Assembly (NCBI RefSeq): GCF_040938485.1
Contig: NW_027272318.1
Location: 62,001-126,000, forward strand
Length of the DNA: 64,000 bases
DNA from: Diadema antillarum
Taxonomy: Eukaryota
Direction: 5' to 3'
Below, in pieces: positions 1 through 57,051 of the stretch. The first letter of the stretch is position 1. Each line of letters begins with the position of its first letter. The position numbers and the translations under genes are program-made. The notes beneath the pieces are model-generated. The model was given only the letters and a program-made list of their open reading frames with translations, was not told where the DNA came from and did no database searches.

Positions 1-3000
1 GGTTGCTTTCACACCGGAAGCCGTTGATCATGAGGTGGACCAGCTGCGGCTTGAGACTCAGGAAGCTGATCTCTGGCTCGGACTTTGCCTCCTCCCCTGG
101 ACTCTCCTTCTGAATGATACCTGGAGGAATGCAAAGAGAAGTGTGATGTCAAAGCCATTTAATTGCCAGGGAAACTGGTTCTAAACAACCTTACCTGGGC
201 CCTGTTTCATGAAGCTGTTCGTAAATTTACGCATGACTTCACAAACGACTGAAATATGAAGTGCCAATATGTGTGCCCATTTTTTCCCCCTTCATGTTTT
301 AACTACGTACGACTGTACAATGTATGTCAATATTTCATCTACATTTGTTAATATGTAAGAATAATCATTATCTTTTGCAAATTTCAACCCTAGCTATTGA
401 AATGAACAATCATTAGGAAACCCACTTTGCTTGCCATATTCAAGTCCTTTGTAAAGTTGTGCGTAACTTTACGAAGAGCTTTATGAAACAGGGCACTGGC
501 CAGAAATATGAACACTATTGCGGGTAACTGTGCTTGCATCTGGTTCCAACCCAAGCTATAACGAAAAGACTGCAAGATCATCACTGTGTTACTCTTACAA
601 AGTTTGCTTCTGAGGGATTCAAAAAAACTACTGGTAATTCAGGGGTTTGCCACTAGCCGCGTGGCAAATGCTAAGGGGGGAGGGGGACTGTGATGACTTT
701 GTTGCGATGGTAACTTCTAGCTGTCGCTTTTCTCCTTGCAAAACAATTCCATCTCTATACAAAAATTCTGAGCCTGTGAAACAGTCATATCATGAATACC
801 ATCGACCTCCTTTGATCTTCAGCACTTTAACAAGTGACAGCTAGGAATTTTTTTTTTCACATCTTCGCATGGTAACATGTGTACAGTCATTTATATGTGC
901 TCCTTGAACTGTTTGCACGTCTGAATCATGAATGCATATACACTGCACTGCATAATCATTATTACTGAATTATTATTCAGTGCTTTGGAGGATGGAGTCA
1001 CTCATTACACACTCGGCTGTAAGAACAAGACAATCATATGTGTTACCATACTAGTAATACTTTGGGGACCACAGGCTACTACAGAAGTCAAGAGACTTGC
1101 ACTGCTTGAGACATCAGGTTTCGGTACAAGCCGAGTTCTTTCCCTGCTTATTTAGCTAACATCCTTTTTTTTGGTCAACATCTGCATATTGCTAAATCGG
1201 ATGACTGATAAATAATTTAATCTACATCCATTACCTTAAAGGTATTGTACAGTATTGGTTGAGACCTAATTTCAGGTTTCTAACATTTCTTGTTGAGATA
1301 ATGAGAAACCTCTTATGAAATATGAAAGAGCATGTAATTCTATGAGGAATTCAACGTTTATTTGATAAAAATTGGTTTTGAAATGGCTGAAATATCCAAA
1401 AAAGAGTGATTCCAATAAAGTGTGGGACCCACACTTTATTACGATTGCTTTGTTTTACTTTGTTTTTGGATGTTTCAGTCATTCCAAACCCGATTTTGAT
1501 CAAATAAACTTTGAATTCCTTTCAAAATGGTATGCTCTGTACTATTTCATAAGTGTTTTCTTGGTATCTCGCAAAAAGTTAAAAGCCCAATTCTCATCTC
1601 CACCAATACTGTACCATCCCTTTAAATACAGTTGTACGGCAAAAACGTCGGCTAATTCTACATCTCACATATCCTAGACACACAAGGAGAGACAAAAATA
1701 CACAAACATGCACCCACATACAGACACACACATGCAAACACAAACGATAAAGTTATTACTATTACAGTGTTTTTACCATCATGGTATTTAGTACTATTCT
1801 TTATAGCATATCCGTTTACGCCAAATATTTCGTGAGGTTTTTATTTTCGCGAATTTCGCGAGTCAGGTGCTATTCGCGAAATTAAAGACACACGAAAATA
1901 TTGACTCTGATCCCAATGTGAATGTAACATATGCGTATACACTTCTCCGTTCCAGTACAGGACTCCACGATCACAAATTTAATCACTTGCGAAATTGTCG
2001 GGAATTCCCGATTCGCAAAATTTTAGACTCGCGAAATATATGGCGTATACAGTACTTCTTTACCTTTTGCTTTTATACTTTGTACCATGTATTGCCTTCT
2101 GTTTCATGAAAATAAAGGAAAACGAATTGATTTTAATTGAATTGAATGTTTGAGAGATGTGGTTACCATGGCGACAAGAAGAGGAGAAAAAACTAACTTT
2201 GAATGGTGAGGTCCTTGAAGTGGTGAGGCAGACAGAGCATTGACATCAGCAGATGGATGCAGGCTCGCCGGAGCTCGTTCTTGGGCACCAGAGATCTGGC
2301 ACAATAATGCAACAAATTTGATCAGCATCATCTATACATCATATACCTGTATCTTGCATGGTTCAATGACGTTTGCTCCTGAGACAATTGCTCCCATGAA
2401 ATATCTACAGGTACATGCTAAGTCAAACATAAATTCTGCCCACAAACTTAACCCTAATCCTAATCCTCACAATAGACTAAGCCTAAAACACTATCACAAA
2501 CCTAATCCTAACCCTAAGTCCTATGAGAAAATTAGACCAGACTTAGATAACTGTTGCAGGAGCAAATGTTGTGTCACCATCGTGCATACATCTACATCCG
2601 GACACATTTCGCAATAACAGCTACAATTCAATAAACTAAGCCCAAGTCACTTTGGGCTGTATTGTCGAAAGTGTAAACAGTCCGACCTCTTATCCAGCCT
2701 CCCTTTATCCAGATCTCTCTATTACACCACTATACACCCTATCTACACTTAAGTGTAAACTTCTCATAGATGCTAATACATGTGCACCATAACATTGAAA
2801 CCTTTATCTACAACAAAAGTGTAAAATTTAATACATGCCACCATATGGACACCATTTTATTGACACCCTAATCTATACCTTAGCTTGAATGACTCACCTG
2901 AAGCGAAGCTCAGTGTCTGGAATGACGATTTCCATGGCGGTCAGGAGGTACGGGATGAGCACCTTGACCCCTGCCAGGTCAACCCGTAGAAGGTTGTCGG

Positions 3001-12000: not shown

Positions 12001-15000
12001 TTCAACTTGAACAGACAAAATCCAGGACATGGTTCACACTGTATTATCCTTTCAAAAATCTTAAAGCGAAGTGTAATGATTAAATCAAAATAACAAAACA
12101 AAACAAAACTGATAGAAGTCCTTCAGGGCAACTACAATTATTCTAAATGCTAGGACACAATAGACAAACATAAAACTGCAGAACATATAAATTGTCATAT
12201 CATTTTGTATTTTACTTTGCATGCAACAAGAAAGAAAAATCGCAAAATACTGGTGAAGAAATGGGAGTATGGCAAAGTGCAATATCAAATCCGTAAGTAG
12301 CAAAACAAGAAAACTGACCTTCATTATTGTTGTTTGCACAACCAATCTTTACAACAGAAACATATTATGTAAGTGCAACAATAACTTGTTCCTTCTCTTC
12401 CTGCCTGATATGAATGAACATCATGCTGTGTGAAACAATATTATTGATATCGACCGACTTTTATTTGCAAGGGACAATATCTTCTCCAAGACTCTTAATG
12501 CAGTTGTTTTGACTTGTGTCATAAGAATGTTTCTAGCTCAGGCAATATATGAAAAGTGCACAAGAGAAAATGCTTCACTGTGATATTCAATAAAGTATGT
12601 ACTTTGGTATCTGATTACCTACTTTCCACTCAGCAGTTCTGCACCAGAATTAAAAACAATCAATGTCACCATGGGTCCAATCAAATCAATCAAAATTGCG
12701 CTAAAGAATACACCATATAATTTCCTACTCTCTCAAGGACAGCAGCTGCATGACTACAGAATCTTAATGTCATCTACATGGCCAGCAAAGTTCACTGACC
12801 TTGATGCCTGGGTTTGAAGAGGTTAACAAGGTGCTGGAAGATCTTCTGGATGTACGGATTGGGGTCCTTAATGAGCGGCATGGGTAATGTTGGTTGGGGG
12901 ATGGTCAGCGCCTTGAGCCACTCGCAGTACACACTCACACAGTCACGGATGGCCTCATGTTCACTCAGTGGGAGGCCAAGCCCATAGCATATCACCTGAA
13001 AAGTAGAACAACATTTTATCATTTAATGAAACAAATGTGACTAACAAGGTTGGGAATTTGGGGCTGTCATCAATTACCTACTATCAGATACAGTAGTATT
13101 CCTGCTCCATCCACTGAGTGTGTGTGTGTCAAAATTTGTCTTTTAATATGACCTCGGTTGCCTTTTACTATCAGCTTTAGTTATAGTTTTGACTTATTGA
13201 TTCATTGTAGACACTAATGCACTTTTGTATTTATGTGGATATCTTGACCTGAATTGAATTTATTTTCTACTTCAAAGATAAAAGAGCAAACATGTACATT
13301 AAACATGATACACACAAAAATATACAAATTACGGGAGTGGTTGAGAATAGCTCATAAACAAATGAATGACAGGATGCAAGAGTCTACTCTGACGAAACCA
13401 CCCAGAAATCAGTGACTGTGTGTAATGCAAGCCGCCCATTAATAGACTACAATGCCGTCCCAAATTCTACCGCCAGCTACGTGTAGAAACCTATGAGCCT
13501 TTGCGCACAGTCGAACCTTGGTGCAGGTGCTGTACACAATCAACTGACGCATAAGTTCACTCTTCTTTGCTTACAAACATTATAAAGAAACCAAGTCCAG
13601 ATCTGCAGTAGGTGACTGTAATTTTCTGGGAAGGATTCTACTCATCATTGACATTATATACAACTTACAAGCTGCGACCAGCCAAAACACAAAGCGTAAA
13701 ACGGAGTGCCCTGGGGTTACCTAGACATGGGGTACAACCAGCATCTCATATTTATACACATTCATGGTCTAGAAACCTACCAATTTAACATGTTATTTAA
13801 ACCTCAAGCAATCGCAATCATGTTTAAGTTTCTTTGCATCATACATTATGTAAATCGCCCAGCCCACCAGTTGCAAGTTGGAAAGTAGACAGAAAGATCC
13901 GTCTGTCCGGAGGACTCTTTTATATTTTGCCATTAACGCTGTCCTCCGTAGACAGACGGAAGGTTGCAATACCCATTGCTGTGTGGATGTTCTTAACCAC
14001 TGTCTCTATGGAAAATTGGGTGAGGTACCTCACCCTTCTCGATTGCGTCTAATTCACGGCCCTACGTCGGCAAATTTAAGCTTGTATAGTGGAATCAACT
14101 ATTCAAGAGTATATTGCACTCACCAGATGAATGAATAATCCAACATTTTGGTCGAATTTTCAACGTAAAACACACATCAACCAGCCCGTCGCGTCGTCAC
14201 GTTCAAACTGCAGCAACATACAGTACGAATCTATTAGCCAATCACATGCGAGGTAGTTTCTACGTGTTTTTTTTACTGAAACATGTACCTCACATGTGAT
14301 TGGCTTACAGATTCAAAATGGCGACTTACGGCTAGCGGACGGCGATGTTGCGATATGGATAAAATTTCTGCGTTATAACCGAGTTACTGTGAGTATTTCG
14401 ATTGCAAAATGTGAGAAATTAACCCCAAATATTGCTGCATAATGTGTCAAACTGTCATGTCATGTCAAACTTATTTGAATGTAAAAAAGCTGCCTGAAAT
14501 TTGGTTTATCGCAACGTTTGATCTGTGCGCTACTGCCACACAGGAGCTGGCATCATTGACTTCGGTCTGTATACGGAGGGGATCCGTGAAGCCAGACGCA
14601 GTCTCCGCGGAACATTCCCCGACGGACTATCAGTAGGGGTGCTGGTCCGAGAATGCGGATCGTCCGCACAAACGAGGGTATCTTCGTAAACGCGGACAAA
14701 TCGCGTCTGCGAAAATCGGGATCGGTAGCTTTTTCACGGACGATCTTTTTCCTCGGGGCTTTGCGGGCTTAGGGGTACCGAACCGCACGTTCTAGATGCG
14801 ATAGACGGATTCCTCGTGTACAAATACCCCTAGTTCACCGTCTACTTTTGTGGGTTGTCCGTCTTCCCGTGGATTTATCGCGCGAAATGTGAAAGTCGCT
14901 GTGCTGTCAATGGCAATACATGTACACGCATCATGGAGCAACTTAACACACCTACGAAGTCACCAATGCACTTTGCAGTGGAATTACGGCAAATTTGAAC

Positions 15001-18000
15001 GGTATGAATATTTCTTATGAATAAAATATTAATTCTAATTATTGTTAATTAATATTCCGATTTCCGATTGTCTGGTTTGGCGACTGTATGCCGGTACCTA
15101 CAAATCCCGTTGTGAACACATCGTGACGTTGTGTTGAAAACTACTTGCTGGTAATGTGTTGTATGTCCGACTGCACGTGCGCAGCTACCGACGCTAGTTT
15201 CCCATGTATAATGTATGCATGCACATGGGCATTTAAATGATCAAAAACAAAACGGCAAGTGCTTTAATATTCAAGGAACGGTTGAATAAAACTAACAACA
15301 AAACTCTATAAACAAAACAAAACAAAAACAAACGAAAAAAAAATAATTGTGAAACAGTGGAAACGAAATTATCAAAGATACTTCTTTCGATCGCATCTAA
15401 ATGATATTCCCATTTTTAAAATCCTTATGATCAAATGATTTATAAAATAAACTTGAAAATGGCTCCCGTAAGCGAGTACTGCAGCAATTTTAAAGACTGG
15501 TCGCACTACAGTTATAGAGTATGCAGTGCTGATAGTTTAACCAAACTGTGTTTGATTTTATGAATCATTGTATCTATGAGGGTGAGCTCTCACCTGTAGG
15601 TCCGGCGGTAGCACGCCCGTCATCGTGGAGTCAAGTGAGGGGAGAGGCCAGTGCTATGGTAAGAAAAGTTACCAGAACTTCTCACATGATGGCCCACACG
15701 CATGCTTCATTAATTGGTCGGTGAATGATGATATCACATTTGTTTTATTGGTTATTGCATCATAAGCGCATCATAAGCAGAAACAAATTACATGCGTACT
15801 TCTTTAGAAGTGTTACACGTGTGCCACATCAATTCTGTTTGAATCTAGATGCAAGTATACTAACCAAACTACATCTGTTAATTTCATAAAGATGACCTCC
15901 AAGAACTGATGGATGCTCACATTCAGGAAATGAAGGAGTTGCGTAATGAAGGCCAAAACGAACAAGGTAAGCAACGTTACACATAAAAGTAACATTGATA
16001 TATTGCCACCAATCTGATTCAGTATTAATATCACACTGCATATTTGTCTTTCTCTCTGTGAAACTGGAACATTTCTTAACAGTTTTTGATATATTTTCTT
16101 TCCTTGTCTTATGGCACAGATCCCAACAGCACAATCGAAGCTGAGCAAGGTAAGATCGTACGATGTGTAGGATAATGGCAGCCCTGAAATAGGCCCTCCA
16201 ATCTTCCCTGAATCATTATTAATGCTCAACAATGATTCTGCATGTTGCGTTGGCAAGAGGAGCTGATATGGTGCACTTGCGTTACCACGAACGACATATT
16301 GTTACAACGTCGAAGCACATGCAAAAATTAAGATCTAAAAATAAACGTCATTGAGTCCCTCAAAAGTAAAACATTTATAGCTAAATTTTCGATTTAACGA
16401 AGTAATTTCCGGGCGACATTGAAAAAGAAAAATGAACGAAATTTATTCTATAAGGCCCTATAACGAAATGCGGGACGCTTACGATATACAGTATGACTTC
16501 AGCATAAGAAAAATTTAGCGAGCGTCTCTTTGTTGAAGAACGCATCACATTTTTGTGGGTTTAAATAGAAATCGCTCTGCGTTTCAGAGAACTTGCATTA
16601 GGCCATATTATAAGATAATCCGAAATGAAATAACGATCGTTTTTTCCGAAGGTTCGTAATTCCAAAACACACAAATTCTGTTTGCAGTGTACCTAGATGT
16701 TCGTTGCAAATCCGAAATAAACTACTGTCCGTCATTGCGACATAGTTTGTATGGCATATGACGTTACTGCGAAGATTCATTTTTCCTTGCATTCAGTAAT
16801 CCGAAAATGAAATAAGGTTCGCTATTACGAATGTTCCTTAACCTAAAAATGTTTGGAATCTTTGTGTTTCAAGGTTCGTTAATCGGAAATGAAAATCGTT
16901 TGTTAATCCGAAAATGAAGATGTGATTATAGGACTGCTAACAAAAACATACATCATTGTTTTTAGACCAACAAGTCTTCAGATAATGAACCGTTTTCATT
17001 TAAGGATGAACGATCTTTTTTATGAACAATGAACCTTATTTCCATTTTATGATAAACGAAATGAAATAACATTTTCTCATTGACGGATGAACAAACCTTC
17101 GGAAAAAACGAATGATACCGGTACTTCATTTCGGATTAATGGACTTCCAGCATAGCAAACCTTAAATTTCCTTTTCATATAAAAAGAACCTTTCATTGAA
17201 GATGAACAAACCTTCGGAAAAATCGAATGATACTTCATTTCGGATTAATGGACTTTCAGAATAACAAACCATAAATTTCCTTTTCATTTAAAAAAGAACC
17301 TTTTGAACAACTGTTACGAACCTTGGGAATAGCGAGCCGTAAAACCGACGACCCGTCGAAACGGCAAACCTTTTATAGTACAACGGACATTAGGAACAAC
17401 GAACCTTTAGAATAGTACTCGAATCCTCAACTACTTTGATGTGATTTCAAACTATAAGCATGAAGTACAAACAACTTTCTCTATTAAATGTACAATATCG
17501 ATGAAATTAAAGTGATAGCATTGCATTTAATATTGCTTTTTAGCGTATTATGAGTAGTCGATAATCACATATTTGAGTGTTTGTTTTTTTTTGTGTTGTT
17601 GTACACAAAATTTTGATACAACGAAACAAAACTGCCGATCCCAAAGACTTTGTTCTAACGTCAGTACACTGTACTTCGGCAAGATACCTTTTAGTGTGCA
17701 GATGTGTTTATTTCATGTATAATTCTGCCCACTACACTCTAAACTGCCGAGTTACTTTTGTTGTACACATTAATTATACTATAGTATTAATTTGTTCTTC
17801 TCTTTGATTTAGGGAATGATCTTGGTGGACAGAACACGACAGCAGTTCTAGAAATTGATGTTGAAGGGCACATGTTCATGCAAGTTGGGCTACTCTCAAT
17901 TCATGTTCGCATGTTCGGCTTGCTCCTCACGAATGTCGGCTTTCCCGGCGGCTCTCAGTACCAGTGTCACGGCGTCATGAAGCATAGCTTGCACTTGTTG

Positions 18001-20108
18001 TCATGCAATTAACATCCAGAATTACTGCTCAATGACTTTCCTTCAGCTTGTTCTTGATGGGAATGATGCTGTAACCTTTACTTCTCATGAATTAATTCTG
18101 TAGAAAAAGAAAATGACATTTTTATTTCGAAACGGGGAAAACTTGTGTGATATCAAAGTAAGATCATAAAGTGTACGCATAATGTTAAAATATTGTGTAC
18201 TTGACCAACGGTGTTGTTTATAATGTTAAGGGACATTCCTTCCTGATATGTTGCTGTGTATGAACAGCTATGTGCTTAGCATCTGCCCATTCTGTTTGTA
18301 ACTGAAAAAAAGTCACCAAACTATCTTTTTCCGAGGACAAAAGATAAAAAGTCTTGACATCAGCTCCTATAATAAAGTCATACTTTTGTTTGTGCCCTCC
18401 TCGGCAACTCCAAGGCCAAGCTCTGTCTGTGCCAAACCGTTTGGTAACTGTTTAATAACAATTAAAGTGCAATTTCACGTTCAATACTCTAAAATCTTTT
18501 ACAATTTACTAAGTTTATTATTATGTCTGTTATACTTAAATTGTCACTGATCTATTTGTTTCTCTTTTTTTTTTGCTTTCCAGTACGTTATCTTACTGCT
18601 GAATGTTTCATTATTCTAGGCGTACAATGTAATTAGGCTTTTAGTCTTTTTTTTTTGTATTATAATTCTAGTCTATAGCATTATTGTCAGCACAGAAAGG
18701 ATACATGCATGTATCGTGTACTGTGATACCTGTGCCTATTTTTGTTTAAAAGCTGATTTTTTTTTTTGTCTATAGAATTGGAAATAAAATGTGAAGATTT
18801 GTGTGTGTGTGCGTTTGTGATTAATTGGTACCGGTACCTGATTTCTTGGCGCTTGTTTTGTTTGTTTGTTTGTTCTTAATGTATGATAACAATTTCCTGG
18901 CATTTGGGTATCTCAAACACCCCCAGTTACACATGCATACCCACACAAGACTTCTAATACATGCAGGTTTCGTCAGCGCTATAACATTGAATGGAAAATA
19001 CTAAATGTGTGTCGTTTTCAATTAAAAATTGTAGTAATTAAATGATAGACGTAAACTGACGTGAAACTCGTCTGCCTTTCACATACAAGTCAACATGCTA
19101 CAATAGGCCGCTTGCAAGAATTATTCACAATTTACAGTATATCCTGAAACGTCCATGAATCCAAGCTCATCTAGATCTAGAGATCTTCTAAATTTTACAT
19201 AGATCTACAATTGTAGGTACAATGTTATGCTTGTAGCTGTATAAACATCACAATGATAGTAGGACATCGATACTCACATTTAGGTTGAAGAGCATTTCAC
19301 TAATACCATGATCCATATTGGTCCTAGAAACGCAAAATTTGCTCGACTTGATGTCGCAATGCGCAGCATGCAGCGGTACAACGAAGGTACATTTGTACAG
19401 TGTATTACATGTATAGAGATAGCCCGATATCATACATGTATTACATGTATGTCAGCTTCAACTTACAACAAAACATATGCATGGGCACACAGAAAACGGT
19501 GAAAGCAGTGATCTCTGTTTATTGCACATCGTCCTTATTTACGAGGGTCAAAGCAAGAAGCAGTCAACAGTCGCGCTTTTGCGTCCTTACTTTTGGGGAC
19601 AATCATAGTTTTCTAAGCTTATATCGGTTTTTAAGGACGCGTCCTCATTTATCGGGACGCCGTTCGCCGAGAAGTCGGCAGCTTGTGACGTCGTCACCGT
19701 ATACGAAGACGACCCTCATAAATATACAAATACGATCCTCATTCTCGGACCAGCACCCCTACTGACTATACAGACCGATCTTTCGGTCAAGTTGGAAAGG
19801 TGAAACAACTTCTTCATTTATTTACTGTACGAACAACAAAATACATTTATCGTTTACGAGTACAATTATACCTCCATCGTCCATTCTACTTGCTTCTCTG
19901 ACTCCAGGGGGTTGCTTGCTGTTACACCATCTCCTCTCTGCAGTTGCTGCTGTTGATTTGCAGCAAGTGCTGCGGTGTTCGCTGCCAGTTGCTTCACCAC
20001 AGATACGGCGACATCTTTCCCCACGGCTTCGGGGAATGTATGCAGGACGCTCTGGTTACTTTGGTCAGTCTCTATGGCCTCTTGAAGCGAGGCCCAGCCG
20101 GAATACAT
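1..20108 (-). CDS. RALGAPB: Ral GTPase-activating protein subunit beta, 5' part (first 10 coding exons; continues beyond base 1)
   Basis: Exons in transcript order: 20108-19872, 12995-12800, 11788-11624, (acceptor in N gap, >9851)-9624, 8594-8340, 7236-6712, 3678-3389, 3040-2898, 2295-2198, 120-<1. All visible sites are GT-AG with compatible phases. The peptides [95 protein letters not shown] and ISFLSLK match human RALGAPB as I recall it. Confidence 0.95.
198..495. mobile_element. PIF/Harbinger-like MITE
   Basis: TIR GGCCCTGTTTCATGAAGCT / AGCTTTATGAAACAGGGCA; CTG direct repeat at 195-197 and 496-498. Confidence 0.65.
1240..1621. mobile_element. Kolobok-like MITE (TTAA|AGG...CCT|TTAA), family A
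   Basis: TTAA on both sides; nearly the same sequence recurs at 55379-55753 and 62816-62998. Confidence 0.8.
1811..2052. mobile_element. TA-flanked MITE, related family
   Basis: Ends GGCGTATACAG|TA and has TTCGCGAA motifs; the left terminus is decayed. Confidence 0.55.
2360..2578. mobile_element. MITE with telomere-like (CCTAA(C/T)) interior, copy 1
   Basis: Subterminal TIR TTTGCTCCTG/CAGGAGCAAA, AT|GG...CC|AT flanks and an AACCCTAATCCTAA interior; the reverse-orientation copy is at 34469-34677. Confidence 0.65.
7512..7881. mobile_element. Kolobok-like MITE
   Basis: TIR AGGTATTGTTTACCATT / AATGGTAAATAACGCCT with TTAA on both sides. Confidence 0.7.
8631..9202. mobile_element. Kolobok-like MITE
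   Basis: TTAA|AGGACAAGTTCACCC...GGGTGATTTTGTCCT|TCAA, with long internal inverted similarity and a decayed right TSD. Confidence 0.65.
9852..10101. other. Assembly gap (250 N) hiding the acceptor and first bases of RALGAPB exon 4
   Basis: N run directly abutting coding sequence. Confidence 0.95.
11030..11472. mobile_element. MITE with GGCGTTTTCACATCAG TIRs (Harbinger-like termini)
   Basis: Perfect 16-bp TIR, TA on both sides, and multiple internal AATAGCGCG/AATTAGCGCG motifs. Confidence 0.75.
14227..14394 (+). promoter_or_regulatory. Promoter-like segment: inverted CCAAT pair, CAAAATGGCG motif and exon donor
   Basis: 29-bp arms at 14227-14255 and 14286-14314 (26/29) each contain CCAAT/ATTGG. 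CAAAATGGCG (YY1/initiator-like) is at 14314-14323 and a GTGAGT donor at 14389. Confidence 0.45.
14910..18012 (+). CDS. Predicted nested five-exon ORF of unknown function (151 aa), antisense in RALGAPB intron 1 and inside a TIR element
   Basis: Exons: 14910-15001, 15600-15658, 15892-15966, 16120-16149, 17813-18012; 456 nt with no internal stop. Donors are GTATGA, GTAAGA, GTAAGC and GTAAGA; a TACTAAC branch-like motif lies upstream of 15892; AATAAA is at 18371. I recognise no homologue and there is no transcript evidence. Confidence 0.45.
16610..17410. repeat. Foldback-type repeat with reiterated AAGGTTCG/CGAACCTT and TCCGAAAATGAA motifs and a 115-bp tandem duplication
   Basis: The motifs occur in opposite orientation in the two halves; the duplicated unit starts at 17086 and 17201. 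Boundaries are approximate. Confidence 0.6.
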
Positions 20109-20544: not shown

Positions 20545-23500
20545 ATGTCTCGCATCTACCATAATGAAGCGCTGCTTTCTGTTCCTGTAGAAAACCAGTC
20601 TTGGCCAAGCCAGTGGAAACCTGATGATTTTCAAAGGCAAGGAGTACAAAGCAAGAACCGACTTTGGTGGATCTTTTACCCTCTGTCGGATAGGATCTGC
20701 CCATTTCCTATACACGGTCCCATACGTTCAGGATGGAGTTGGGAGAGTGTGAAAGGCTGAAGTAAAGGACCGGAGTAACTGCACTGTCTACCACTCTCCT
20801 CTCTCTCTGTCTGTCTCTCTTTTGTAATTCAGTATTTTTAGATTCAAGAAAAAACTGCAAATATCGAAGAACCTTTTCTATAGGTACTTTTTAGAATGTT
20901 ATGCATTCTCTAGATAATATGGTTTACCCAATGGCAATTGTCATCATTGCATTGGTCCAGTGGCAGTACTGCAGTAGTGAGGTTATTTTTTTTTCTAAGT
21001 TACAGTAAATTTAAATTTAGAATTAGTGTATCATACTCAATCTTATTTCTTTCTTGTTTTTATCTGTATGCGTTTTGTAGTATTAGTCATAGGTGTGTGT
21101 GTGTGTATGTATGTTTGTGTGTGCATCACACCTGATAATGCATGTAATGATTAGCATAGATGCCAAGTTCAAAAATTTTTTTATGAGTGAGATTTTCATG
21201 ACTCAGCATCTCGGCACGTGCACATGTGCGTGAGTGAGGGAGCGAAGCGACTGAGCGAGGGGAGGGTGTGGGAGGGGGGTGTCCGCCCCGAATCCGGTCA
21301 AAACGTCCCCGGGTCAAAACGTCCCCACTGTGTTCCAACCAAAACGTCCCCGGGTCAAGTACTGGTACCAGAACGTCCCCGCTTTTGCATTACAGCTCGC
21401 AACTCTGTGAAGTCACCCAGATTTTGTTGTTTTTGCTTTCACTAAATCTTTTTTTTTTTCAAATGGGTATGAATCGTTCTGACCTTACATCACATTCTCC
21501 ATGATCTAATTATTTATTTTGATATGAACAAAGTGACAATTATTACGCAAAGGGCACAAATTCTACTCACGTTTCGCCATGGTCGAGTTCGGTTTGTTGT
21601 TGACAATTCTATCTCGCGTACGTATTCTCATCACAAGACTCTAGAAATATGCTGGCTTGCTGCTCTAAATAACAAAATTCTATTTTCACAGTTACCATTA
21701 TGAATTGATAAGTGATACTTGTATGAACATAGATTTCATAAAAATTTATGACATAGAACATTTTGACTCGAGGACATTTTGGTGCCAGCTGGGCCCAGGG
21801 ACGTTTTGGTCGTACCCGAGGACGTTTTGGCTCGGGGACGTTTTGACGTGGGGACGTTATGACCAGTAAGCGTCCGCCCTCCCACGGTAGGGAGCTTTTT
21901 CAATTCTTGGCTCTTAATGGTGCAAGCTGGTGCATACTTAAGTGACTATTTTTTGCTTATTTTGAAAGACAAAAGGGAAATATGCCTTCAATTGCAACTC
22001 TCACTTTAATCCTTTAAGCTATGCTCCCAATGCGTGAGAAAAATGGGTGTCATGCGTGAGATCGTGAGACAGACTTTAAATGCTTGAGTCTTACTCACAA
22101 TGCATGAGACTTGGTAGCTCTGGATTAGTCATTTTGATGGTTGCGTCATATCACTTCATTTTAGACTAGAACATGAAGAATGTATGCATGAATTAAATCT
22201 ATTGTATTTTCTTCATTAACGTCTGTCTGGATGGAAGGACTTATGTTCTCAATTGCAAGTTGTTTTGTTAAGTTTCTGTAATTTTTGTCTTTGTTTTCAC
22301 TACAGTGGGACTGGTGCACTAATTGAAGGAAAAATAGAAGCAAGATCGAAGCATGTCATTACAGATTCCAAGCAACAAAAGGTATGTCACAGAAAATCCC
22401 CTCTCACCTCATATCCATTTGTTGTCCCCGCCGAACGAGTTCGAGCAGGGGACTATGAAACGGGCTCCGTACGTGTGTGTGTCCGTGTGTCCGTCCGTCC
22501 ATCCGTCCGTCTGTCTGTGCGTCCGTGTGTGATCAAAATGTTCAATTTGCTACTTCTCTGTCATTTATGAGCCAATTTTGATTCTGTTTGCTTTATATGA
22601 TAGCACTACATGGGAGCTTTGAAATTGCTACACAGAATTTTAGTTGTGACCTTTGACCTTGACCTTTGACCTATATTGTACATTTTGCTTCAAAATGCTA
22701 CTCCTTGGCCATTTCTAACCCGATTTCGATTCCGTCTGCTTTATATGATGGCACTAGGTGAGGGCTTCAAAGATCCTACACAGAATTTTGACCTTTGACT
22801 TCTTTGACCTTTGACCTTGATTTTTGACCTGCATTGTACATTTTGTTACAAAATGCTACTCCTTCGCCATTTCTAACCCAATTTCACTTCGGTTTGCTTT
22901 ATGTGATGGCACTAGGTGAGGGCTTCAAAACTTCTACACAGAATTTTGACCCTTGACTTCTTTGACCTTTGACCTTGATTTTTGACCTATATTGTACATT
23001 GGCTACAAAATGCTACTCCTTCGCCATTTCTAACCCGATTTTGATTCCGTTTTCTTTATGTGATGGCACTAGGTGAGGGCTTCAAAACTTCTACACAGAA
23101 TTTTGACCTTTGACTTCTTTGACCTTTGACCTTGATTTTTGACCTGCATTGTACATTTTGCTACAAAATGCTACTCCTTCGCCATTTCTAACCCAATTTC
23201 ACTTCCGTTTGCTTTATGTGATGGCACTAGGTGAGGGCTTCAAAACTTCTTCACAGAATTTTGACCCTTGACTTCTTTGACCTTTGACCTTGATTTTTGA
23301 CCTATATTGTACATTGGCTACAAAATGCTACTCCTTCGCCATTTCTAGCCCGATTTTGATTCCGTTTTCTTTATGTGATGGCACTAGGTGAGGGCTTCAA
23401 AATTTCGACACAGAATTTTGACCTTTGACTTCTTTGACCTTTGACCTTGATTTTTGACCTATATTGTACATTGGCTACAAAATGCTACTCCTTCGCCATT

Positions 23501-26500
23501 TCTAACCCGATTTCGATTCTGTTTGCTTTTTGTGATGGCACTAGGTGAGGGCTTCAAAACTTCTACACAGAATTTTGACCTTTGACTTCTTTGACCTTTG
23601 ACCTTGATTTTTTACCGATATTGTACATTTTGCTACTAAATACTACTTCCGGTGGGGACATATTTTACGCACCGCGTAATTTCTACTTTTCCTTGTTTTC
23701 AATGTTTTCATATTTTTTTTCACAACTGATGCACACATTTATTAGACACAAACATTTACTCATGAGCAACATAAATATCTGCCAAGTACATGTCAGTACT
23801 TTAGAAGAATTCATTCTGCATTTTTACTTTTATAGATACGATACCTCGTCTTGCATGTCAGAGTGAAGGTCGCCCACAGACGAAAGTTCAACAGCAATGG
23901 AGAGGAAATCGAACCAAACATGGACAACACACAGAAAGTCAACACTGGTTATCTCATGTCATCCTACAGTAAGATTCCCCCCTCCCCCTTTTTTTTCTGT
24001 GATTGTGTGTGTGTGTGTGTGTGTGTTTGGTTTTGTTCCTTTTTTTTCTTGTTTTTCAATGATCAGCTACTTTTCATCATCAGCTCAAAAGTGACTTTAT
24101 TGTCCCCGCCGAACGAGTGAATTTTTGGTGAATACAGCATGAACTTTGTTGCAGCTTTGTTACTTATCTTTTTATCTTGCCANNNNNNNNNNNNNNNNNN
24201 NNNNNNNNNNNNNNNNNNNNNNNNNNNNNNNNNNNNNNNNNNNNNNNNNNNNNNNNNNNNNNNNNNNNNNNNNNNNNNNNNNNNNNNNNNNNNNNNNNNN
24301 NNNNNNNNNNNNNNNNNNNNNNNNNNNTCAAGTTTTACCCTTTGTTAGCTTCAGTGGACAGCTGCTGTCACGGCGGATTCACATTTTCTTTTTCCTGACA
24401 GAGGTTGAAGCCAAGGGGCTAACTGACCACCTGACCCAAACCCAGCTTCAGTCCATGGTCAGCAAACCTGCCCTGGAGGCCCTCACAAGAAAACACATGC
24501 CAGCGGGATGTCTGGCCTTCTGGATGACCGAGCAAGAGCTGGTGGACTTGGAACTTGAGGATGGTGATACCGTCAAACTCAGAACCAAGGGGGATGGACC
24601 TTTCTTGGGTATGTCCAACATACACTATATTAATGCCCAGGGAAATGAAAGAGCAAAGCCTTAAGCCTTAAAGCCTTATTTTTTATAATTTAGTTTAAAG
24701 GGGCATAGTCCCGGTAGTGTAGAGGGCGCTGTTGATGATACTGCCGATCACCGTTAGCATTGATATGAAGATTACCGAAGTTGAGCTGTCATCAAGAGTA
24801 TAGTGCGTAGGTGTTGCTAAGTAACGTTGCCTTTGTTGTCTTCTCTGCACATCGCGCAGTCTGTAGTAATGCCAGGGTGCATGCATATGTGCTTCTTATT
24901 GTGACATCACAAAAGAAGTTTACTAAAGCTGTCTTCCCCCTCAGCCGAATCATGAACTGAACTGTGATCGGACCACTGACTACAGTTAATCAGACTTCTT
25001 CAGACTTGGGGAAGTGGGCCAAAGCGTAAGCGCTAAAGAGGAGTCGAGAGCGTAGGTCTCTATAGGAAACTTGCGCTGTGTGCCCGTGTACGCATTTGAC
25101 TAAAACACCGGGACCATGCACCTTTAAACACTGTGTCCCCATTTTACAGAGTAAGTGCAGGATCTGTCTCCCCAATTTCATTCAGTCTAAATCAAGCTCA
25201 TGAGTTTTATATGATGCTGTGTATTTGTTATGTTAATGTAATTGGTATTTGTATTGTTAGAATGTTCATATAATGTATGTTGTTTGATGTAATTTACATG
25301 TTTTTTAATGTGATGCATTATAATTTAGCCTTCGGGCTACTACTTTGCATGTTTGTTCTAATAAACCATTATCAAATCAAATCGAAGTATATATTTGATA
25401 TTGTAATTTGCATCAAAAAGTGTCAAGACAGTTTTCATATTTGGCCTCCCTAAATAATGAAGTAATTTCCCTTTATTACAGTTCACATAGCATTTAGTAG
25501 CTTTACTTAGTCAACTACTGAGCAAGTGATATCATCCCTGCTTCAGAAAAATGGAAACCATGAGGCGGCCAGGCTTTGGTTGCCCTATAATTCAAAATGT
25601 GCTTATGAAAAATCATCATGCTGCCAGTGCTGCTTGACAAGTTTGACATCAAATAGAGCATATTCCATTTTGTGTCATGCAGAAAGCCTGAAATGGAAAT
25701 GTAAAAGAATGTGGGCAATGGACACTGCATTCTATTTTCAAGTGTTTTGTAAAAGATGATTAATCTCTAGCATGTCTCAATGCCTTAGCTTTTGCATGAA
25801 GCAAACACCCTAACATTCAAACACCAAAGATTACTCGGTGTCAAACGCAATTGAAGTAATAGTTACTGTTGTTCTTATATGCATAAAGACGGAATGTTTA
25901 TTTTTGCTTTGTTACTAATATATTTGTTTTGTTAAATTGTATACCTACTTCCTCTCCTTGGTTTGCCTTCATTTTGTGCAGACTCAGTGGGCAAACTGGA
26001 CACTGTCACAAAAGAAATGACCACTATGGCCGGTTCGGGACAAGTCGGTGTGTCCTGGACTGACAAGATCATGACAGTCAAGTCACAAAATCTGCCTGAT
26101 CCAAAGCCTTTGGAGGAGGAGAATGAAGGAGCCGGGGATGATGAATGGGTGAGACAGTGTCTGCAATATCCACAAGGATTCAAATTTATGAATTCTTGCA
26201 TCGAGTTGTTTTTATTGCAGTAGATTGACAAATCACCCTACATCAATGTAAATAAGTGGTGATTGAACAGTCTTTTTTAATAGTAGTAGCCAGGACGTAG
26301 GGCAGTTTACCAGTCAGTTCCAATAAAAACAACTCAATCCAAGAATTCATTAATTTGAATAATTGCACAGTACCTGCTGCATGCAGTTAGGATAACAACT
26401 AGTACTGACTGTCAGGCAGAAGCTTGGTGGTCAAGTAGACATGATACCTCTCTAGTAATCAGGAGATCATTGGTTCGAATCCAGCCCGAGTGTGTATGCC

Positions 26501-32441: not shown

Positions 32442-35400
32442 CTATGAGTCGAAGAGTAAATCTTCGTCTGCGTCGTCGTCGATGAGGTTCCGGACATCGC
32501 CGTCTGCGCCGGCCGCCTGCCTCAGCTTCTTGCGTTCCTCCTCCTTGGCCTTCAAAATCTTCTTCTTCTCCTGGATCTTCTTCAGACGGTAGAACTCCTC
32601 CCTCTCCCGCTCGTCCAGTTCCGTGGTGATGTACGAGATAGTGTTCTCGATCTTGGGGATGATTACTGTGGAATACAGAAGGGAGACACGCAAACCCTGC
32701 CTGTCAGTATGAAGACACAGTGCGGCAGAACAGACACTGCTTTGATTGGATCTATTACAAATGTACCTTATAATCACTTCATACTTTTGAAGGAAATCTT
32801 TACATATAGTCTGTACATACATACATACATACATACATACATTCATATTGTTGCACTCAAACATACAGTGCATACATATAATCACAAGATTTGCAAATTA
32901 TCTCAAATACATATCAATGAAAGTTAAAAGGGTTGTACAGGGCTGCACTCTCACCCATTTTTTTCTACCAGTGCAAACTTTCTGTTAGGCCAGTAGATAC
33001 CCAATTTTTCCAGTTTTTACTGGTCCATTCCTGAAAAAGTTACTGGTCCGACAGTGATTTTTACTGGTCAGAGATCGTCGGACTAGTGCCAGGGTGCAGC
33101 GTTGGGTTGCCAATGGACAGCTAAAACCAGAAGGGTACACACACAACAATATAATGGTCAAGAGGAAACTTAAATACTGAATAAAACTTGAGAGTAAAAA
33201 CGCACCATGTTCAATAGCATTGACACGCCTGTTTGTGATCTTAATGACCTCATCGAGGGTGACGAATGACGTCTGTAGCGAGGCCAGCTCGACCAGGAGC
33301 TCGATGGCCTTGGCGTAGTTCTTCTTCAGTCGATCCACCTGCTGCCCTCCCCGTGACAGACCAGTCAGCTCATAAGCTTTGAAGGGAAGATAAGGTGGCA
33401 AGATATTAATCTCGAGTTGGATCATATCTGTCGATTACCTGTAAGCTGCTCTTCGGCACATAACGTATGTTATAAAATACAATCATCTTACAACAAGAGG
33501 AAAAGATCTTCATTTCCATTAGTCAAGACTGTTCTTCAGACCAATCTGGTTTAAAATTTGTTGAAAGCTAGTAGAATTTTGCTTTCTTCCTTTCAAAAAC
33601 CTTTAAGAAATCTATTCTATCATTTTCTTAAATATAAGACAATAATTACTTAGGAGTTGTTATGTAGTCTGCCTACAGCTTGGTTGTAAGTTGCATAGAG
33701 AATGAATTAATGATTATTATGCCCTAAATAAATCACAATTCTTGTTATTGTTATTCCTGAAATAGTCCTGGATAGTCCTATAGTGTCCCTCATCCCTTCA
33801 TGGGTTTTGAGTGCTGATGGGCACAGAAAACCCCATAGCTTTGTACATACTGTGCAAAGTTCCTGGCACAGAATGGGTTAAACAGCTGCAGTAATCAGTA
33901 CAGCACAAGGCACAAAATACCCCATGGCATATCTATGCCTCGGGTTGAGACAATATGATAATTGTACGGGAGGAAAGGGAAAATATACCTTCACGTTCCT
34001 AAATTGCTGCTGTGTTTCTCTGTACAAATGTCTACATTTGATTAGCCACGCTAATTCAAACAAATGATGCAATAAGGAGATGATGCAAAAATTTAAAGAG
34101 ATGATACAACAGGGAATAACTTTCAAACTCAAATTTGATTAGCAATTTCAGCTGATGAAAAATATCTCCAATGATATCCTGTACACTTCTATGTAAGAAA
34201 ACTGCTACACAAAAGTTAGTTTGTGTAGCAGTGGTGTAAAAAAGCATAGCAAATTGCGATGCGATACCAGGAAAATTATTCCCTGCACAATGAAATATAA
34301 ACATACAATATAGCAAACTCTTCTCTCATGACCAAATCATGAAACAAACTCCATTTGTAATTGGTCTGTTAGGCAAGCCAAGGCTTGACATTGGCAGTTG
34401 GCCTGGTGGCCGATGGCCACTAAGAATTGATGTTGGGCCACCAAATTTCCAAAAAGGCTATCATTTGGGGTTTAATGTCATTTGCTCCTGCGACAATTGC
34501 CATGGTCTTATTTTCTTGAAGGACTTAGCGTTAGGGTTGTGATGGGGTTTTAAGTCTAGTTTGATTTGAGGATTAGGATTAGGGTAAGGGTTTATGTTTG
34601 TGGGTGGAATTTACGGTTGGCTTAGAGCGCAGATATTTCGCAGGAGCAACTGTCGCAGAAGCAAGCGTCATGGAACCATCGTTTGGTGGCCCAATTGGGC
34701 ACCTACGATTTGAAATGGATTGCTATGTTTCCATTAATTTTGGGCCACCAAAACTTCATATTAAAGGTTTAGATGGTCGAATGGGCCATAAGAGGGGAAA
34801 AAATGGCATTGTTGAGTCCTGGTTGACTATATTTTTTTTTTGTTTGAGCTACTGATTAAGCCACATGGGAGAGAACCTGGGTGCCATTATCTTTCCACTC
34901 ACTGTCTGCTCCATCGGTGTAATGTTCAAAGACTGGCAAGTTGACTCCGGCCACGTTTTCCCTCTTTGACCTGACCTTGGTCTGTGCCTTGGTGACATTC
35001 TGCAGGACATTGTGGCTACAAAGGAGTTAAATGACAGTGGAAGGATGAGTAATTGATGCAACAAGTCTTCCAGTGAATTGCTATATATAGCAAAGATATT
35101 GTCCATTACAAAGAGAGAGACATTAATCAGTTTATGCATTTCTAATCTCTTTTTCCTTACACAGCTTTCTCCCTTCAACACAGAAAGACTTTTAACGTAA
35201 TGTACAGTTTCTCTTTTCTTTCTTTTTTCTCAATGTTTCTTTAATTTGCGCTTTTATTATCTACAAAAGTACAACTCTCGTGGATACTAGCATTATTACC
35301 ACATAGAATAATTTCAGTTCATGAGACTCTGTATGAACAATATGGGTTCCATGCAGCAAAAATTAAACAAAAGTCTTAGCATGCAGATTCAAATAATTTT

Positions 35401-55040: not shown

Positions 55041-55378
55041 TACCATTTATGTCTTCATATTTGTAAGGCTGCATTGTCAGAAAGGGTTGAATACTATTTC
55101 TTATGATCATCTTTTCTTTTGTAGTCCTTACCTTTGTAATTTAAAGTTGAATTGGTTTCAAACATTTGTAATTGTGCAGTAGTTGTTTTGAATAAGGATG
55201 CCAGGATCACACATGGATGTACTGTATACACCATGTATTTCACGAGACTTGACTTTTTGCAAACTGAGACTTCCTGATAATGTTATTGTGCAGATGTTTA
55301 AAATTGCGATCATGGAGCGCAGCAATGAAAGGAGACATGCACACATGCAAGTTGAATTCATGTGAAGGTCTGAGTTAA

Positions 55379-55753
55379 AGGGATCGTACAGTTTTGGTTG
55401 AGACCTAATTTCAGGTTTCTAACATTTTTTGGTGAGATAATGAGAAACCTCTTATGAAAGAGCATGTAATTCCATGAGGAATTCAATGTTTATTTGATGA
55501 AAATCGGTTTTGAAATGGCTGAGATATCCAAAACAGAGTGATTCTAATAAAATGTGGGACCCACATTTTATTACGACTGCTTTGTTTTACTTTGTTTTTG
55601 GATGTTTCAGTCATTCCAAACCCGATTTTCATCAAATAAACTTTAAATTCCTCGTAAAATGGCATGCTCTGTACTGTTTCATAGATGTTTTCTTGGTATC
55701 TCGCAAAAAGTTAAAAGCCCAATTCTCATCTCCACCAATACTGTACCATCCCT
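55379..55753. mobile_element. Kolobok-like MITE, family A
   Basis: TTAA at 55375-55378 and 55754-55757; colinear with 1240-1621. Confidence 0.8.
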
Positions 55754-57051
55754 TTAATCATTTTGCTTGTTTTTAATTTTCCTGAATAGTGCCCGACTAG
55801 CAAAATTTACAAAAATAAAAATGCTCGAGAAATACACAACGTATAAGATACTGTACCATATTTCACCCTTGCTCACAGAGAAAAGCAAATATATCAATGG
55901 GTACAGAGTGATAACAAAACATTGCATCCACTTGTTGACAACAGAATTATCATTGAGGCAAGTGGGAATGTACTCTGAGCGTGTTAAAGTGACAATACCT
56001 CTCTGTGTTCAAATGTTTTTAATGGGGTATAGTAAATTCAAACAAGTAGAACTACTGAAGTTTCCTTGAGGTAAGGTCAAAAGATTATAAAAATCTTACA
56101 TCTATCGCATGTTTTGTATGAAAGAGTGTCATCAGTCATAGCCAAATATGCTAATTAGACTAGATAATGATGATGTCCTAACTTCACACAGTTTTGTTAG
56201 GCTTTTTAATCAAAAGTTGATGTCAAAATATCTACATATGGGTTGATAAAGCAGCAAATGCAATCCTTCCCCATCAAGCACTATTTCTAAGGCATAACAA
56301 CTCTATTATGATTCGATGCAGTGAACATGATTTTCATTAGGTGAGTTTTTTTTTAAATAAAATTTAGTGAAGATTTGTGTACAAGGTCATTGGGTGACTT
56401 GTTTGCAAAGTCATCATCTCATTCAATGTTGCATTAATGACTGTGACAGATGTGTACTGTTTCCTGGAAACATGAAGCTTCCATAATTCTGTATCTGATT
56501 TTAATTGAACAACTTCTACCGTTCTGTTTATTTCATTTTACTTCGCTCGTTGTAGTCAATATGAACATGGAATGGTTTTTAAGTTCTTTCATGACTAGAC
56601 CTGTTTAAAGTACTGTATACATGTAATTTGTACAAACTGTAGAATATGTTTATATCTTGTGCGATATTTGTGTCATTTTTCTGTACAAAGGCATGTTAAT
56701 AAATACATGGCAGTTGCCAACATCTGAACATGAAAAATGATTTATTTTTGTTCAGTCTTAACTATGATTACATATATTTAGGTGGAACATGGACATGAGA
56801 AATAGATACATGATCGTGAGACTAAATCAGACATACACTGTACTTTACACAGACATATGCATCTTATGTAAACTTTTTTTTCTTTTTAGTCTGCTGTTTT
56901 GATGTTGTTTTGGGGGTCCTGATACCTTGGATGATCTTTTGAGAAAAAAAAAAGAGAGAAATATAACAAATAATGTAAACATACAAACCAAAAACTTGAG
57001 TCGTTATAATCTTTTCAATTGCTAGGATTGAAATGCAAGTTCTAGTTGATT

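What the first reader, a model, noticed from the sequence alone, without database searches (positions are those of the whole stretch)
14626..19769. 5.1-kb gene-carrying DNA transposon with 5-bp TSD and non-canonical CAGTAGGGG termini in RALGAPB intron 1
Seen: 33-bp TIRs (32/33 identical) bound 5,134 bp, flanked by ACTAT on both sides. Deleting the element and one ACTAT restores a 12-bp perfect inverted repeat (14562-14573 vs TAT+ACAGACCGA), so the flanks were once contiguous. I found no transposase-sized ORF inside, but there are splice-competent exons on both strands, converging around 17700-18400. Known: 5-bp TSDs characterise Transib/RAG-like transposons (termini CAC) and hAT5; convergent intron-containing genes are the ProtoRAG layout. 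Inference: the termini start CAG rather than CAC and no RAG1/Transib core is visible, so this may be an unclassified family or a Pack-type derivative that carries genes.
Basis: partly seen in the sequence, partly recalled or inferred. Interest (0 to 1): 0.85.

Follow-up and report, generated by a model that had tools for sequence, protein, structure and literature searches.

The report
Gene-less 5.1-kb DNA transposon in intron
This is a real but ordinary jumping-gene insertion in the first intron of a sea-urchin RALGAPB gene: a 5.1-kb passenger copy with matching inverted ends that shows no sign of carrying genes, and whose family cannot be named from this one copy.

Summary
Inverted repeats of 33 nt (32/33 identical) at 14631-14663 and 19732-19764 bound 5,134 bp. 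ACTAT flanks both sides, and the repeat occurs nowhere else in the window. The element sits inside a ~764-bp MITE-like element, about 97 nt past the donor site of the first coding exon of RALGAPB (minus strand).

Nothing inside looks like a gene:
- All 57 stop-free stretches of 40 aa or more are blank in Pfam.
- Three stretches, including the best "exon", have no real homologues in billion-scale protein libraries.
- Random sequence of the same composition yields spliced ORFs of 157-327 aa, so "splice-competent exons" carry no weight.

There is no RAG1/RAG2/Transib signal. The ends fail the Transib CAC heptamer and nonamer.

A 5-bp duplication with CA...TG ends and CpG-rich subterminal repeats best fits a non-autonomous cut-and-paste element moved in trans. 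It is most like hAT5, less likely a Transib/CMCT relative. Neither can be shown without a transposase or other copies.

A 3-bp (CTA) reading predicts the same empty site, so the empty site cannot separate the two readings.

The genome-wide copy census and the empty-site test could not be run with these tools. Two other first-stage notes of this scan cover the same stretch of DNA.

The parts
14626..14630 (.). Left copy of the target-site duplication ACTAT
   Evidence: Read directly. Identical to 19765-19769.
14631..14663 (+). Left terminal inverted repeat, begins CAGTAGGGGTGCTGG
   Evidence: the repeat finder I2 gives 34 nt at 97%. The 25-mer occurs only at the two ends of the element.
14664..14880 (.). 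Left subterminal region: CpG-rich, with short repeated CGTCC/GGACG and CGGAC/GTCCG motifs and weaker inverted similarity to the right end out to about 75 nt
   Evidence: Alignment of the two ends. Motifs are enriched 10-20x over the interior. CpG o/e over the terminal 250 nt (14631-14880, TIR included) is 1.53.
14631..19764 (.). Whole non-autonomous element, 5,134 bp
   Evidence: Bounded by TIRs and TSD. No coding signal.
16600..17410 (.). Internal cluster of ~110-nt repeat units in direct and inverted orientation, including a 2-copy tandem of period 109 at 17077-17303
   Evidence: the repeat finder I1, I6, I10, D13, D20. TRF. blastn self-hits.
17791..18009 (+). Stop-free 73-aa stretch put forward as a terminal exon; no evidence that it codes
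   Evidence: Pfam blank. Among 1.84 billion representatives, only spurious hits to tandem-repeat proteins.
19515..19731 (.). Right subterminal region, CpG-rich, with the same short motifs
   Evidence: CpG o/e over the terminal 250 nt (19515-19764, TIR included) is 1.52.
19732..19764 (-). Right terminal inverted repeat
19765..19769 (.). Right copy of the target-site duplication ACTAT
13886..14625 (.). Left and main part of the host MITE-like element into which the 5.1-kb element inserted (left TIR GACAGAAAGATCCGTCTGT at 13888-13906)
   Evidence: A direct repeat (C)AAGTTGGAAAG lies at 13874-13885 and 19788-19799.
19770..19788 (.). Right end (TIR) of the host MITE-like element
   Evidence: 0 mismatches to the degenerate 19-mer; 0.02 expected by chance.
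19862..20108 (-). RALGAPB first coding exon; its donor site lies about 97 nt from the element's right end
   Evidence: The 80-aa ORF matches PDB 9qwp_B residues 35-103, E 2.5e-8. Splice site read.
12795..13022 (-). Stop-free stretch holding the RALGAPB second coding exon
   Evidence: Matches 9qwp_B residues 100-166, E 9e-20.

Best explanation
A non-autonomous cut-and-paste (TIR) DNA transposon of 5,134 bp inserted into the right subterminal part of an older ~764-bp MITE-like element. The site is in the first coding intron of RALGAPB in the sea urchin Diadema antillarum (organism name taken from earlier scan notes).

It encodes nothing recognisable. It must have been moved in trans by a DDE transposase made by an autonomous relative elsewhere in the genome.

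Inferred mechanism: the enzyme binds the 33-nt TIRs and the short CpG-containing subterminal repeats, cuts at the CA...TG ends, and joins the ends to target DNA cut with a 5-nt stagger. Repair of that stagger gave the ACTAT duplication.

Shown: TIRs, TSD, nesting, absence of coding signal, intron position.
Inferred: trans-mobilisation, the 5-nt stagger, the superfamily.

My split for the superfamily:
- hAT5-like hAT, about 0.4
- Transib/CMCT lineage with atypical ends, about 0.2
- another or undescribed lineage, about 0.4
For: - TIR pair 32/33, unique in the window, 0 expected by chance.
- Exact 5-nt flanking repeat.
- The flanks belong to one palindromic MITE end (12/12 inverted repeat; 19-nt outer TIRs plus an 11-12-nt direct repeat).
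- Inverted similarity of the ends extends to about 75 nt, and subterminal CGTCC/GTCCG motifs are enriched 10-20x.
- CpG o/e is 1.0-1.5 in the element against 0.47 in the adjoining intron and 0.61 in the window. This fits a comparatively young, foreign block.
- No coding signal: 57 of 57 stop-free stretches of 40 aa or more are Pfam-negative. There are no homologues for the 137-aa, 162-aa and 73-aa stretches, and the Atlas gives nothing usable.
[quoted passage not shown] CMCT lineages share CA..TG ends and 2-5-bp TSDs (PMC12730594).
Against: - Only one copy is available, so mobility of the family, TSD length and target preference rest on a single insertion.
- No empty site could be fetched.
- The fifth base of the hAT YARNG motif is A, not G.
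- The 33-nt perfect TIR is longer than I recall as typical for hAT.
- 5.1 kb is large for a non-autonomous element. A many-exon transposase of a family invisible to Pfam cannot be formally excluded; a Transib-lineage transposase without domain hits is reported in bioRxiv 10.64898/2026.08.26.747230.
- High CpG could also reflect closeness to the RALGAPB 5' end rather than youth.
Confidence: 0.8

Rival explanations
1. One reading: a gene-carrying element with convergent intron-containing genes, either ProtoRAG-like or a Pack-type derivative carrying captured host genes.
For: GT/AG-bounded stretches with consistent frames can be strung together on the + strand (15891-15969, 16121-16150, 17813-18009), read. 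The 5-bp TSD is shared with Transib/RAG (PMC1131882).
Against: - Random Markov-1 sequence of the same length and composition gives best spliced ORFs of 157-327 aa. The element gives 217 and 268 aa, and other 5.1-kb blocks of the window give 185-424 aa.
- No Pfam family for any of the 57 stretches.
- The 73-aa 'terminal exon' matches only tandem-repeat artefacts among 1.84 billion representatives.
- No homologues for the 162-aa and 137-aa stretches.
- No similarity of the interior to anything else in the window.
- No RAG1, RAG2 or Transib signal anywhere.
Confidence: 0.04
2. The duplication is 3 bp (CTA) and the ends are TCAG...CTGA. The element would then belong to a 3-bp-TSD group: PIF/Harbinger-PHIS, Zator, or EnSpm/Chapaev-type CMC.
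For: The TIR match extends one base further (T/A), giving 34 nt. The predicted empty site is identical under both readings. The same ambiguity is documented for NuwaII, C|TNA|G (PMC4482050).
Against: - Under a 3-bp TSD, the extra A and T completing ACTAT must match by chance (1/16). Under a 5-bp TSD only the T/A complementarity is chance (1/4). That favours 5 bp about 4:1.
- CTA fits none of the PHIS target motifs (TWA from my recollection; ANT, CWG, TNA from PMC4482050), and PHIS TIRs mostly start GG or AG.
- TC..GA ends lack the CA..TG signature of the CMCT lineages (PMC12730594).
- No DDE_Tnp_4 or Myb ORF remnants (Pfam calls).
Confidence: 0.15
3. A Transib-lineage non-autonomous element with diverged ends.
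For: 5-bp TSD and CA..TG ends. Earlier scan notes report canonical Transib/RAG-like elements in this genome (unchecked). A 2026 preprint reports that TIR and TSD features vary within a Transib lineage.
Against: - Positions 1-3 (CAC) are reported as perfectly conserved in the 21 Transib families analysed in that paper (PMC1131882); here they are CAG.
- There is no A-rich nonamer after a 12- or 23-nt spacer: positions 31-39 read CGTCCGCAC and CGTATTTGT (sequences).
- The target ACTAT is AT-rich, whereas Transib prefers GC-rich targets.
Confidence: 0.2
4. Not a mobile element: a chance inverted repeat, or two unrelated solo ends bracketing ordinary intron sequence.
For: Only one copy was seen and no empty site was recovered.
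Against: - 32/33 inverted identity against 0 expected.
- An exact 5-nt flanking repeat at the symmetric boundaries (1/1024).
- The flanks reconstitute one MITE end.
- The CpG content changes at the block.
Confidence: 0.02

Closest known systems
hAT5 group of the hAT superfamily (Kapitonov & Jurka 2007, as cited in PMC12730594; also PMC9004415)
   Same: 5-bp target-site duplication. Terminus begins CAG and matches YARNG at 4 of 5 positions. Short repeated subterminal motifs. Reported from invertebrates and fish.
   Different: The fifth terminal base is A, not G. The 33-nt perfect TIR is longer than I recall as usual for hAT. No hAT transposase, BED finger or hATC domain remnant is present, so membership cannot be shown.
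Transib / RAG-like transposons, including ProtoRAG
   Same: 5-bp TSD. CA..TG ends. TIR length of 30-40 nt.
   Different: CAG instead of the invariant CAC. No nonamer-like A-tract. AT-rich target. No RAG1-like or RAG2-like coding sequence and no convergent gene pair.
Long non-autonomous internal-deletion derivatives, such as the 1.4-kb Kodama derivative of Nozomi (bioRxiv 10.64898/2026.08.26.747230)
   Same: TIRs kept, no transposase, longer than a classical MITE, presumably mobilised in trans.
   Different: The interior here shows no remnant of a transposase gene at all. It may be unrelated filler rather than a deleted autonomous element.
NuwaII / PHIS elements with an ambiguous 3- or 5-bp duplication (PMC4482050)
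   Same: The same logical ambiguity: palindromic bases at the junction make 3 bp and 5 bp indistinguishable from an empty site.
   Different: The target motif (C|TNA|G) and GG-starting TIRs do not match A|CTA|T and TCAG. No DDE_4 or Myb genes.

Membership tests
Transib / RAG-like | 5-bp target-site duplication | tested here: met
   ACTAT on both sides. A 3-bp reading is not excluded.
Transib / RAG-like | TIR begins with a CAC heptamer (CACAATG-like); positions 1-3 invariant (PMC1131882) | tested here: not met
   The terminus is CAGTAGG at both ends.
Transib / RAG-like | A-rich nonamer after a 12- or 23-nt spacer | tested here: not met
   Positions 31-39 are CGTCCGCAC (left) and CGTATTTGT (right). 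Positions 20-28 are GAGAATGCG and GAGAATGAG (sequences).
Transib / RAG-like | RAG1-core-like DDE transposase (plus a RAG2-like gene for ProtoRAG) | tested here: not met
   No Pfam hit in the 57 stop-free stretches. No homologues for the three stretches searched. This copy is non-autonomous, so the family's enzyme stays unknown.
hAT (hAT5 group) | 5-bp TSD (the hAT5 definition) | tested here: met
   definition from PMC12730594 and PMC9004415.
hAT (hAT5 group) | Terminal motif YARNG (PMC3014272) | tested here: inconclusive
   CAGTA: Y, A, R and N fit; the fifth base is A instead of G.
hAT (hAT5 group) | hAT transposase (hATC dimerisation domain, BED finger) | tested here: not met
   No such Pfam hit in this copy. 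An autonomous partner was not available.
PIF/Harbinger-PHIS | 3-bp TSD of type TWA, ANT, CWG or TNA, with TIRs starting GG/AG (PMC4482050) | tested here: not met
   The 3-bp reading gives CTA with TIR TCAG. The CWG and ANT readings give unequal flanks.
Tc1/mariner-pogo | TA target-site duplication next to CAGT-type ends | tested here: not met
   The flanks next to CAG/CTG are AT and AC. No symmetric boundary gives TA/TA.
Pack-type (gene-fragment-carrying) elements | Interior homologous to host gene exons | tested here: not met
   No similarity to the rest of the window. No protein homologues or Pfam domains. The whole genome was not searchable.

The most novel reading that the evidence does not exclude
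The element represents an undescribed lineage of cut-and-paste transposons that makes 5-bp duplications but has CAG rather than CAC ends. Examples would be a deep branch between hAT5 and the Transib/CMCT groups, or a Transib relative that has lost the RSS-like heptamer. Its autonomous partner would sit elsewhere in the Diadema genome.
Probability: 0.12. Interest if true: 0.5.

Novelty: new member of a known kind. Interest (0 to 1): 0.2.

Why it matters
As it stands, this matters little. It is one more non-autonomous DNA transposon nested in another, in an intron of a TE-rich sea-urchin genome.

It lies about 100 nt from the first splice donor of RALGAPB, so it could affect splicing or promoter-proximal regulation. 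Nothing here shows that it does.

It would gain interest only if a genome-wide census linked these CAG-ended, 5-bp-TSD termini to a transposase outside hAT5 and Transib. The end and target rules of the RAG/Transib and hAT lineages are used to trace the origin of V(D)J recombination signals, so such a link would bear on that question.

Tried and rejected
- Other copies. The TIR 25-mer and 15-mer with up to 3 mismatches occur only at the two ends in the window. blastn of 13.8-20.6 kb against the window gave only self-hits. The 22-mer in JGI metagenome contigs gave 0 hits. Earlier-notes look-ups by sequence were blank.
- Using ORF translations as a proxy to find copies in public assemblies. The right-end 137 aa and the 162-aa stretch gave nothing.
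- Empty site. The exact RALGAPB exon ORFs are not on record. Exon-1 homologues at 83% and 81% identity exist in ENA sample ERZ26222911, but their DNA cannot be fetched. A 68%-identity hit on an 862-bp contig was judged too distant to align intron sequence.
- Coding potential. Tried Pfam on all stop-free stretches of 40 aa or more, the ESM Atlas on the 162-aa stretch (recognition below the useful range), and the exhaustive HMMER search on the 73-aa stretch. The top hit of the HMMER search (E 3.8e-10) is an artefact of about 20 tandem repeats, each 28% identical.
- Small RNAs. Rfam gave sub-threshold C/D snoRNA-like hits at 15987-16077 and 18058-18131. One lacks the C box and the other the D box; rejected. 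No tRNA was found.
- Literature search for the terminal 9-mer returned only unrelated primers.
- Rejected boundary readings: an 8-bp TSD with TAGGGG ends (flanks unequal), CWG or ANT PHIS readings (flanks unequal), and a TA TSD (needs ends unequal by 1 nt).

Full report
**What is there.** The window carries a pair of inverted repeats at 14631-14663 and 19732-19764. They are 33 nt long with one mismatch, or 34 nt at 97% if the adjoining T/A is counted. The 25-nt terminus occurs exactly twice in the 64 kb, in opposite orientation, against zero matches in 100 dinucleotide-preserving shuffles. Relaxing to a 15-mer with three mismatches adds nothing. The repeats bound 5,134 bp. ACTAT lies immediately outside both ends (14626-14630 and 19765-19769). 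Weaker inverted similarity continues to about 75 nt from each end. The terminal 300 nt on both sides are enriched 10-20-fold over the interior for CGTCC/GGACG and CGGAC/GTCCG. Such short subterminal repeats are, from general knowledge of hAT, CACTA, P and Mutator elements, typical transposase-binding arrays.

**Where it sits.** According to earlier notes of this scan, which I did not verify, the genome is that of the sea urchin Diadema antillarum. On the minus strand, the 80-aa ORF at 19869-20108 matches residues 35-103 of the solved human RalGAP beta chain 9qwp_B. The stretch 12795-13022 matches residues 100-166, and a later exon at 8182-8643 matches residues 297-391. These are consecutive coding exons, so the element lies in the first coding intron, with its right end about 97 nt from the donor site (read).

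The element is itself nested. A 19-nt imperfect inverted repeat, GACAGAAAGATCCGTCTGT (13888-13906) and its partner at 19770-19788, is flanked by the direct repeat (C)AAGTTGGAAAG at 13874-13885 and 19788-19799. Once the 5.1-kb insert is removed, this defines a ~764-bp MITE-like host. Another first-stage note on this same DNA (s1-234810) had suggested this nesting, and I could verify its anatomy. Its right arm is already intact in the present sequence, so excision only brings the arms together. It still supports flanks that were once contiguous.

**Length of the duplication.** Three readings fit this single copy:
- 5 bp: ACTAT with ends CAG...CTG.
- 3 bp: CTA with ends TCAG...CTGA.
- 6 bp: GACTAT, with ends unequal by one base.

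The 5-bp and 3-bp readings predict exactly the same empty site, GACGGACTATACAGACC. The same ambiguity is described for NuwaII elements (PMC4482050). A simple likelihood argument favours 5 bp about 4:1: a 1/4 chance coincidence under 5 bp against 1/16 under 3 bp. In addition, CA...TG ends are the common signature of hAT and of the CMCT lineages (PMC12730594).

**Does it carry genes?** I found no evidence that it does.
- The longest stop-free stretch is 162 aa.
- All 57 stop-free stretches of 40 aa or more were scanned against Pfam. None reached a curated threshold or hit a transposase, RAG, Myb or any plausible family.
- The 137-aa stretch running into the right TIR and the 162-aa stretch have no homologues in the 5.8-billion-cluster library.
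- The 73-aa stretch that would be the 'terminal exon' of the + strand model (17791-18009) was compared with all 1.84 billion representatives. The four hits are repeat artefacts. The best is a protein of about 20 tandem 61-aa repeats, each only 28% identical to the query.
- The ESM Atlas gave nothing usable.

To test the weight of 'splice-competent exons', I wrote a dynamic-programming search for the longest ATG-to-stop ORF. It allowed up to four GT-AG introns with moderately strict splice-site filters. The element gives 217 aa (+) and 268 aa (-). Forty Markov-1 random sequences of the same length and composition give 157-327 aa, and other 5.1-kb blocks of the window give 185-424 aa. A 151-aa five-exon ORF, the subject of another first-stage note (s1-234802), is therefore expected by chance.

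Two sub-threshold C/D snoRNA-like Rfam hits inside the putative introns lack a C box or a D box. There is no tRNA. The interior contains a cluster of ~110-nt repeat units and resembles nothing else in the window.

**What it most likely is.** It is a non-autonomous cut-and-paste transposon mobilised in trans. CpG observed/expected is 1.5 in the terminal 250 nt and 1.0 in the interior. The adjoining intron stands at 0.47 and the window as a whole at 0.61. Together with the near-perfect TIRs and intact TSD, this fits a comparatively recent insertion. Closeness to the RALGAPB 5' end is an alternative cause of the high CpG.

**Comparison with known families.**
- Transib. The 38-nt consensus TIR is a CACAATG heptamer, a 23-nt spacer and an A-rich nonamer. 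Positions 1-3 were perfectly conserved in all 21 families analysed, and targets are GC-rich (PMC1131882). Here the end is CAGTAGG, there is no nonamer, and the target is AT-rich. Of the defining features, only the TSD length is met.
- A recent preprint shows that TIR and TSD features can drift within a Transib lineage, and that classification should rest on the transposase. Transib affinity is therefore lowered, not excluded.
[quoted passage not shown] This is the closest known description, but without a transposase it remains a resemblance.
- PHIS, Tc1/mariner and Pack-type readings each fail a tested feature.

**What could not be done.** No echinoderm genome, Repbase or Dfam is reachable with these tools.
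- The TIR is absent from JGI metagenome contigs.
- Earlier-notes look-ups by sequence were blank.
- Exact-match look-ups of RALGAPB exon ORFs found nothing.
- The only related exon-1 ORFs (83% and 81% identity, ENA ERZ26222911) come without retrievable DNA.

They are listed as next steps.

**Verdict.** The insertion is real and cleanly delimited, but ordinary. The exciting parts of the interpretation (carried genes, ProtoRAG-like layout) are not supported. Whether the family is new cannot be judged from one non-autonomous copy. Interest is low, at 0.2. I put about 0.12 on the termini belonging to an undescribed 5-bp-TSD lineage.

Noticed in passing
window 13874-14625 and 19770-19799: Host element of the nest: a ~764-bp MITE-like element with 19-nt imperfect TIRs and an 11-12-nt flanking direct repeat (C)AAGTTGGAAAG. 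It starts only about 73 nt past the RALGAPB exon-1 donor. An 11-12-nt duplication would be unusually long (Mutator-like range).
   Followed up: partly
window 14227-14314: Near-perfect hairpin (29-nt arms, 90%, 30-nt loop) inside the host MITE. It gives sub-threshold hits to plant miRNA precursor models (MIR2600, MIR3440), most likely just because it is a hairpin.
   Followed up: no
window 13886-19788 versus the rest: CpG observed/expected averages 1.07 inside the nested block against 0.53 elsewhere. Other CpG-rich patches at about 10.5-11.5 kb, 39.5-42 kb and 50 kb may mark further young repeats in an otherwise CpG-depleted region.
   Followed up: partly
window 22527-23770: Tandem array of about 157-nt units (7 or more copies; neighbouring pairs up to 98% identical).
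   Followed up: no
window 45188-46174: Large nested palindrome: 287-nt arms at 94% (45325-45611 / 45655-45941), enclosed by further inverted pairs of 52 and 71 nt. It looks like a foldback-type element.
   Followed up: no
window 39498-39534 / 40852-40888: Another TIR pair (37 nt, 92%) bounding about 1.39 kb; a candidate separate DNA transposon. TSD not resolved.
   Followed up: no
window 1235-1626, 55374-55758, 62811-63003, 63541-63890: Dispersed repeat family of about 300-400 nt in both orientations (76-100% identity); probably a MITE or SINE family.
   Followed up: no
window 24329-24661 (+) and 32445-33425 (-): Neighbouring genes: an Arpin-like exon (PF10574, E 1.5e-19) and two exons of V-ATPase subunit D (PF01813, E 6e-18 and 5e-13).
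   Followed up: partly
proteins P0001 and P0002 (ENA sample ERZ26222911): Two different RALGAPB exon-1-like ORFs (83% and 81% identical to this window) lie on two contigs of one ENA sample. One contig also carries a p31comet-like ORF and the other a Fringe/galactosyltransferase ORF. These could be two haplotypes, paralogues or species of another echinoderm. The DNA is not retrievable.
   Followed up: no
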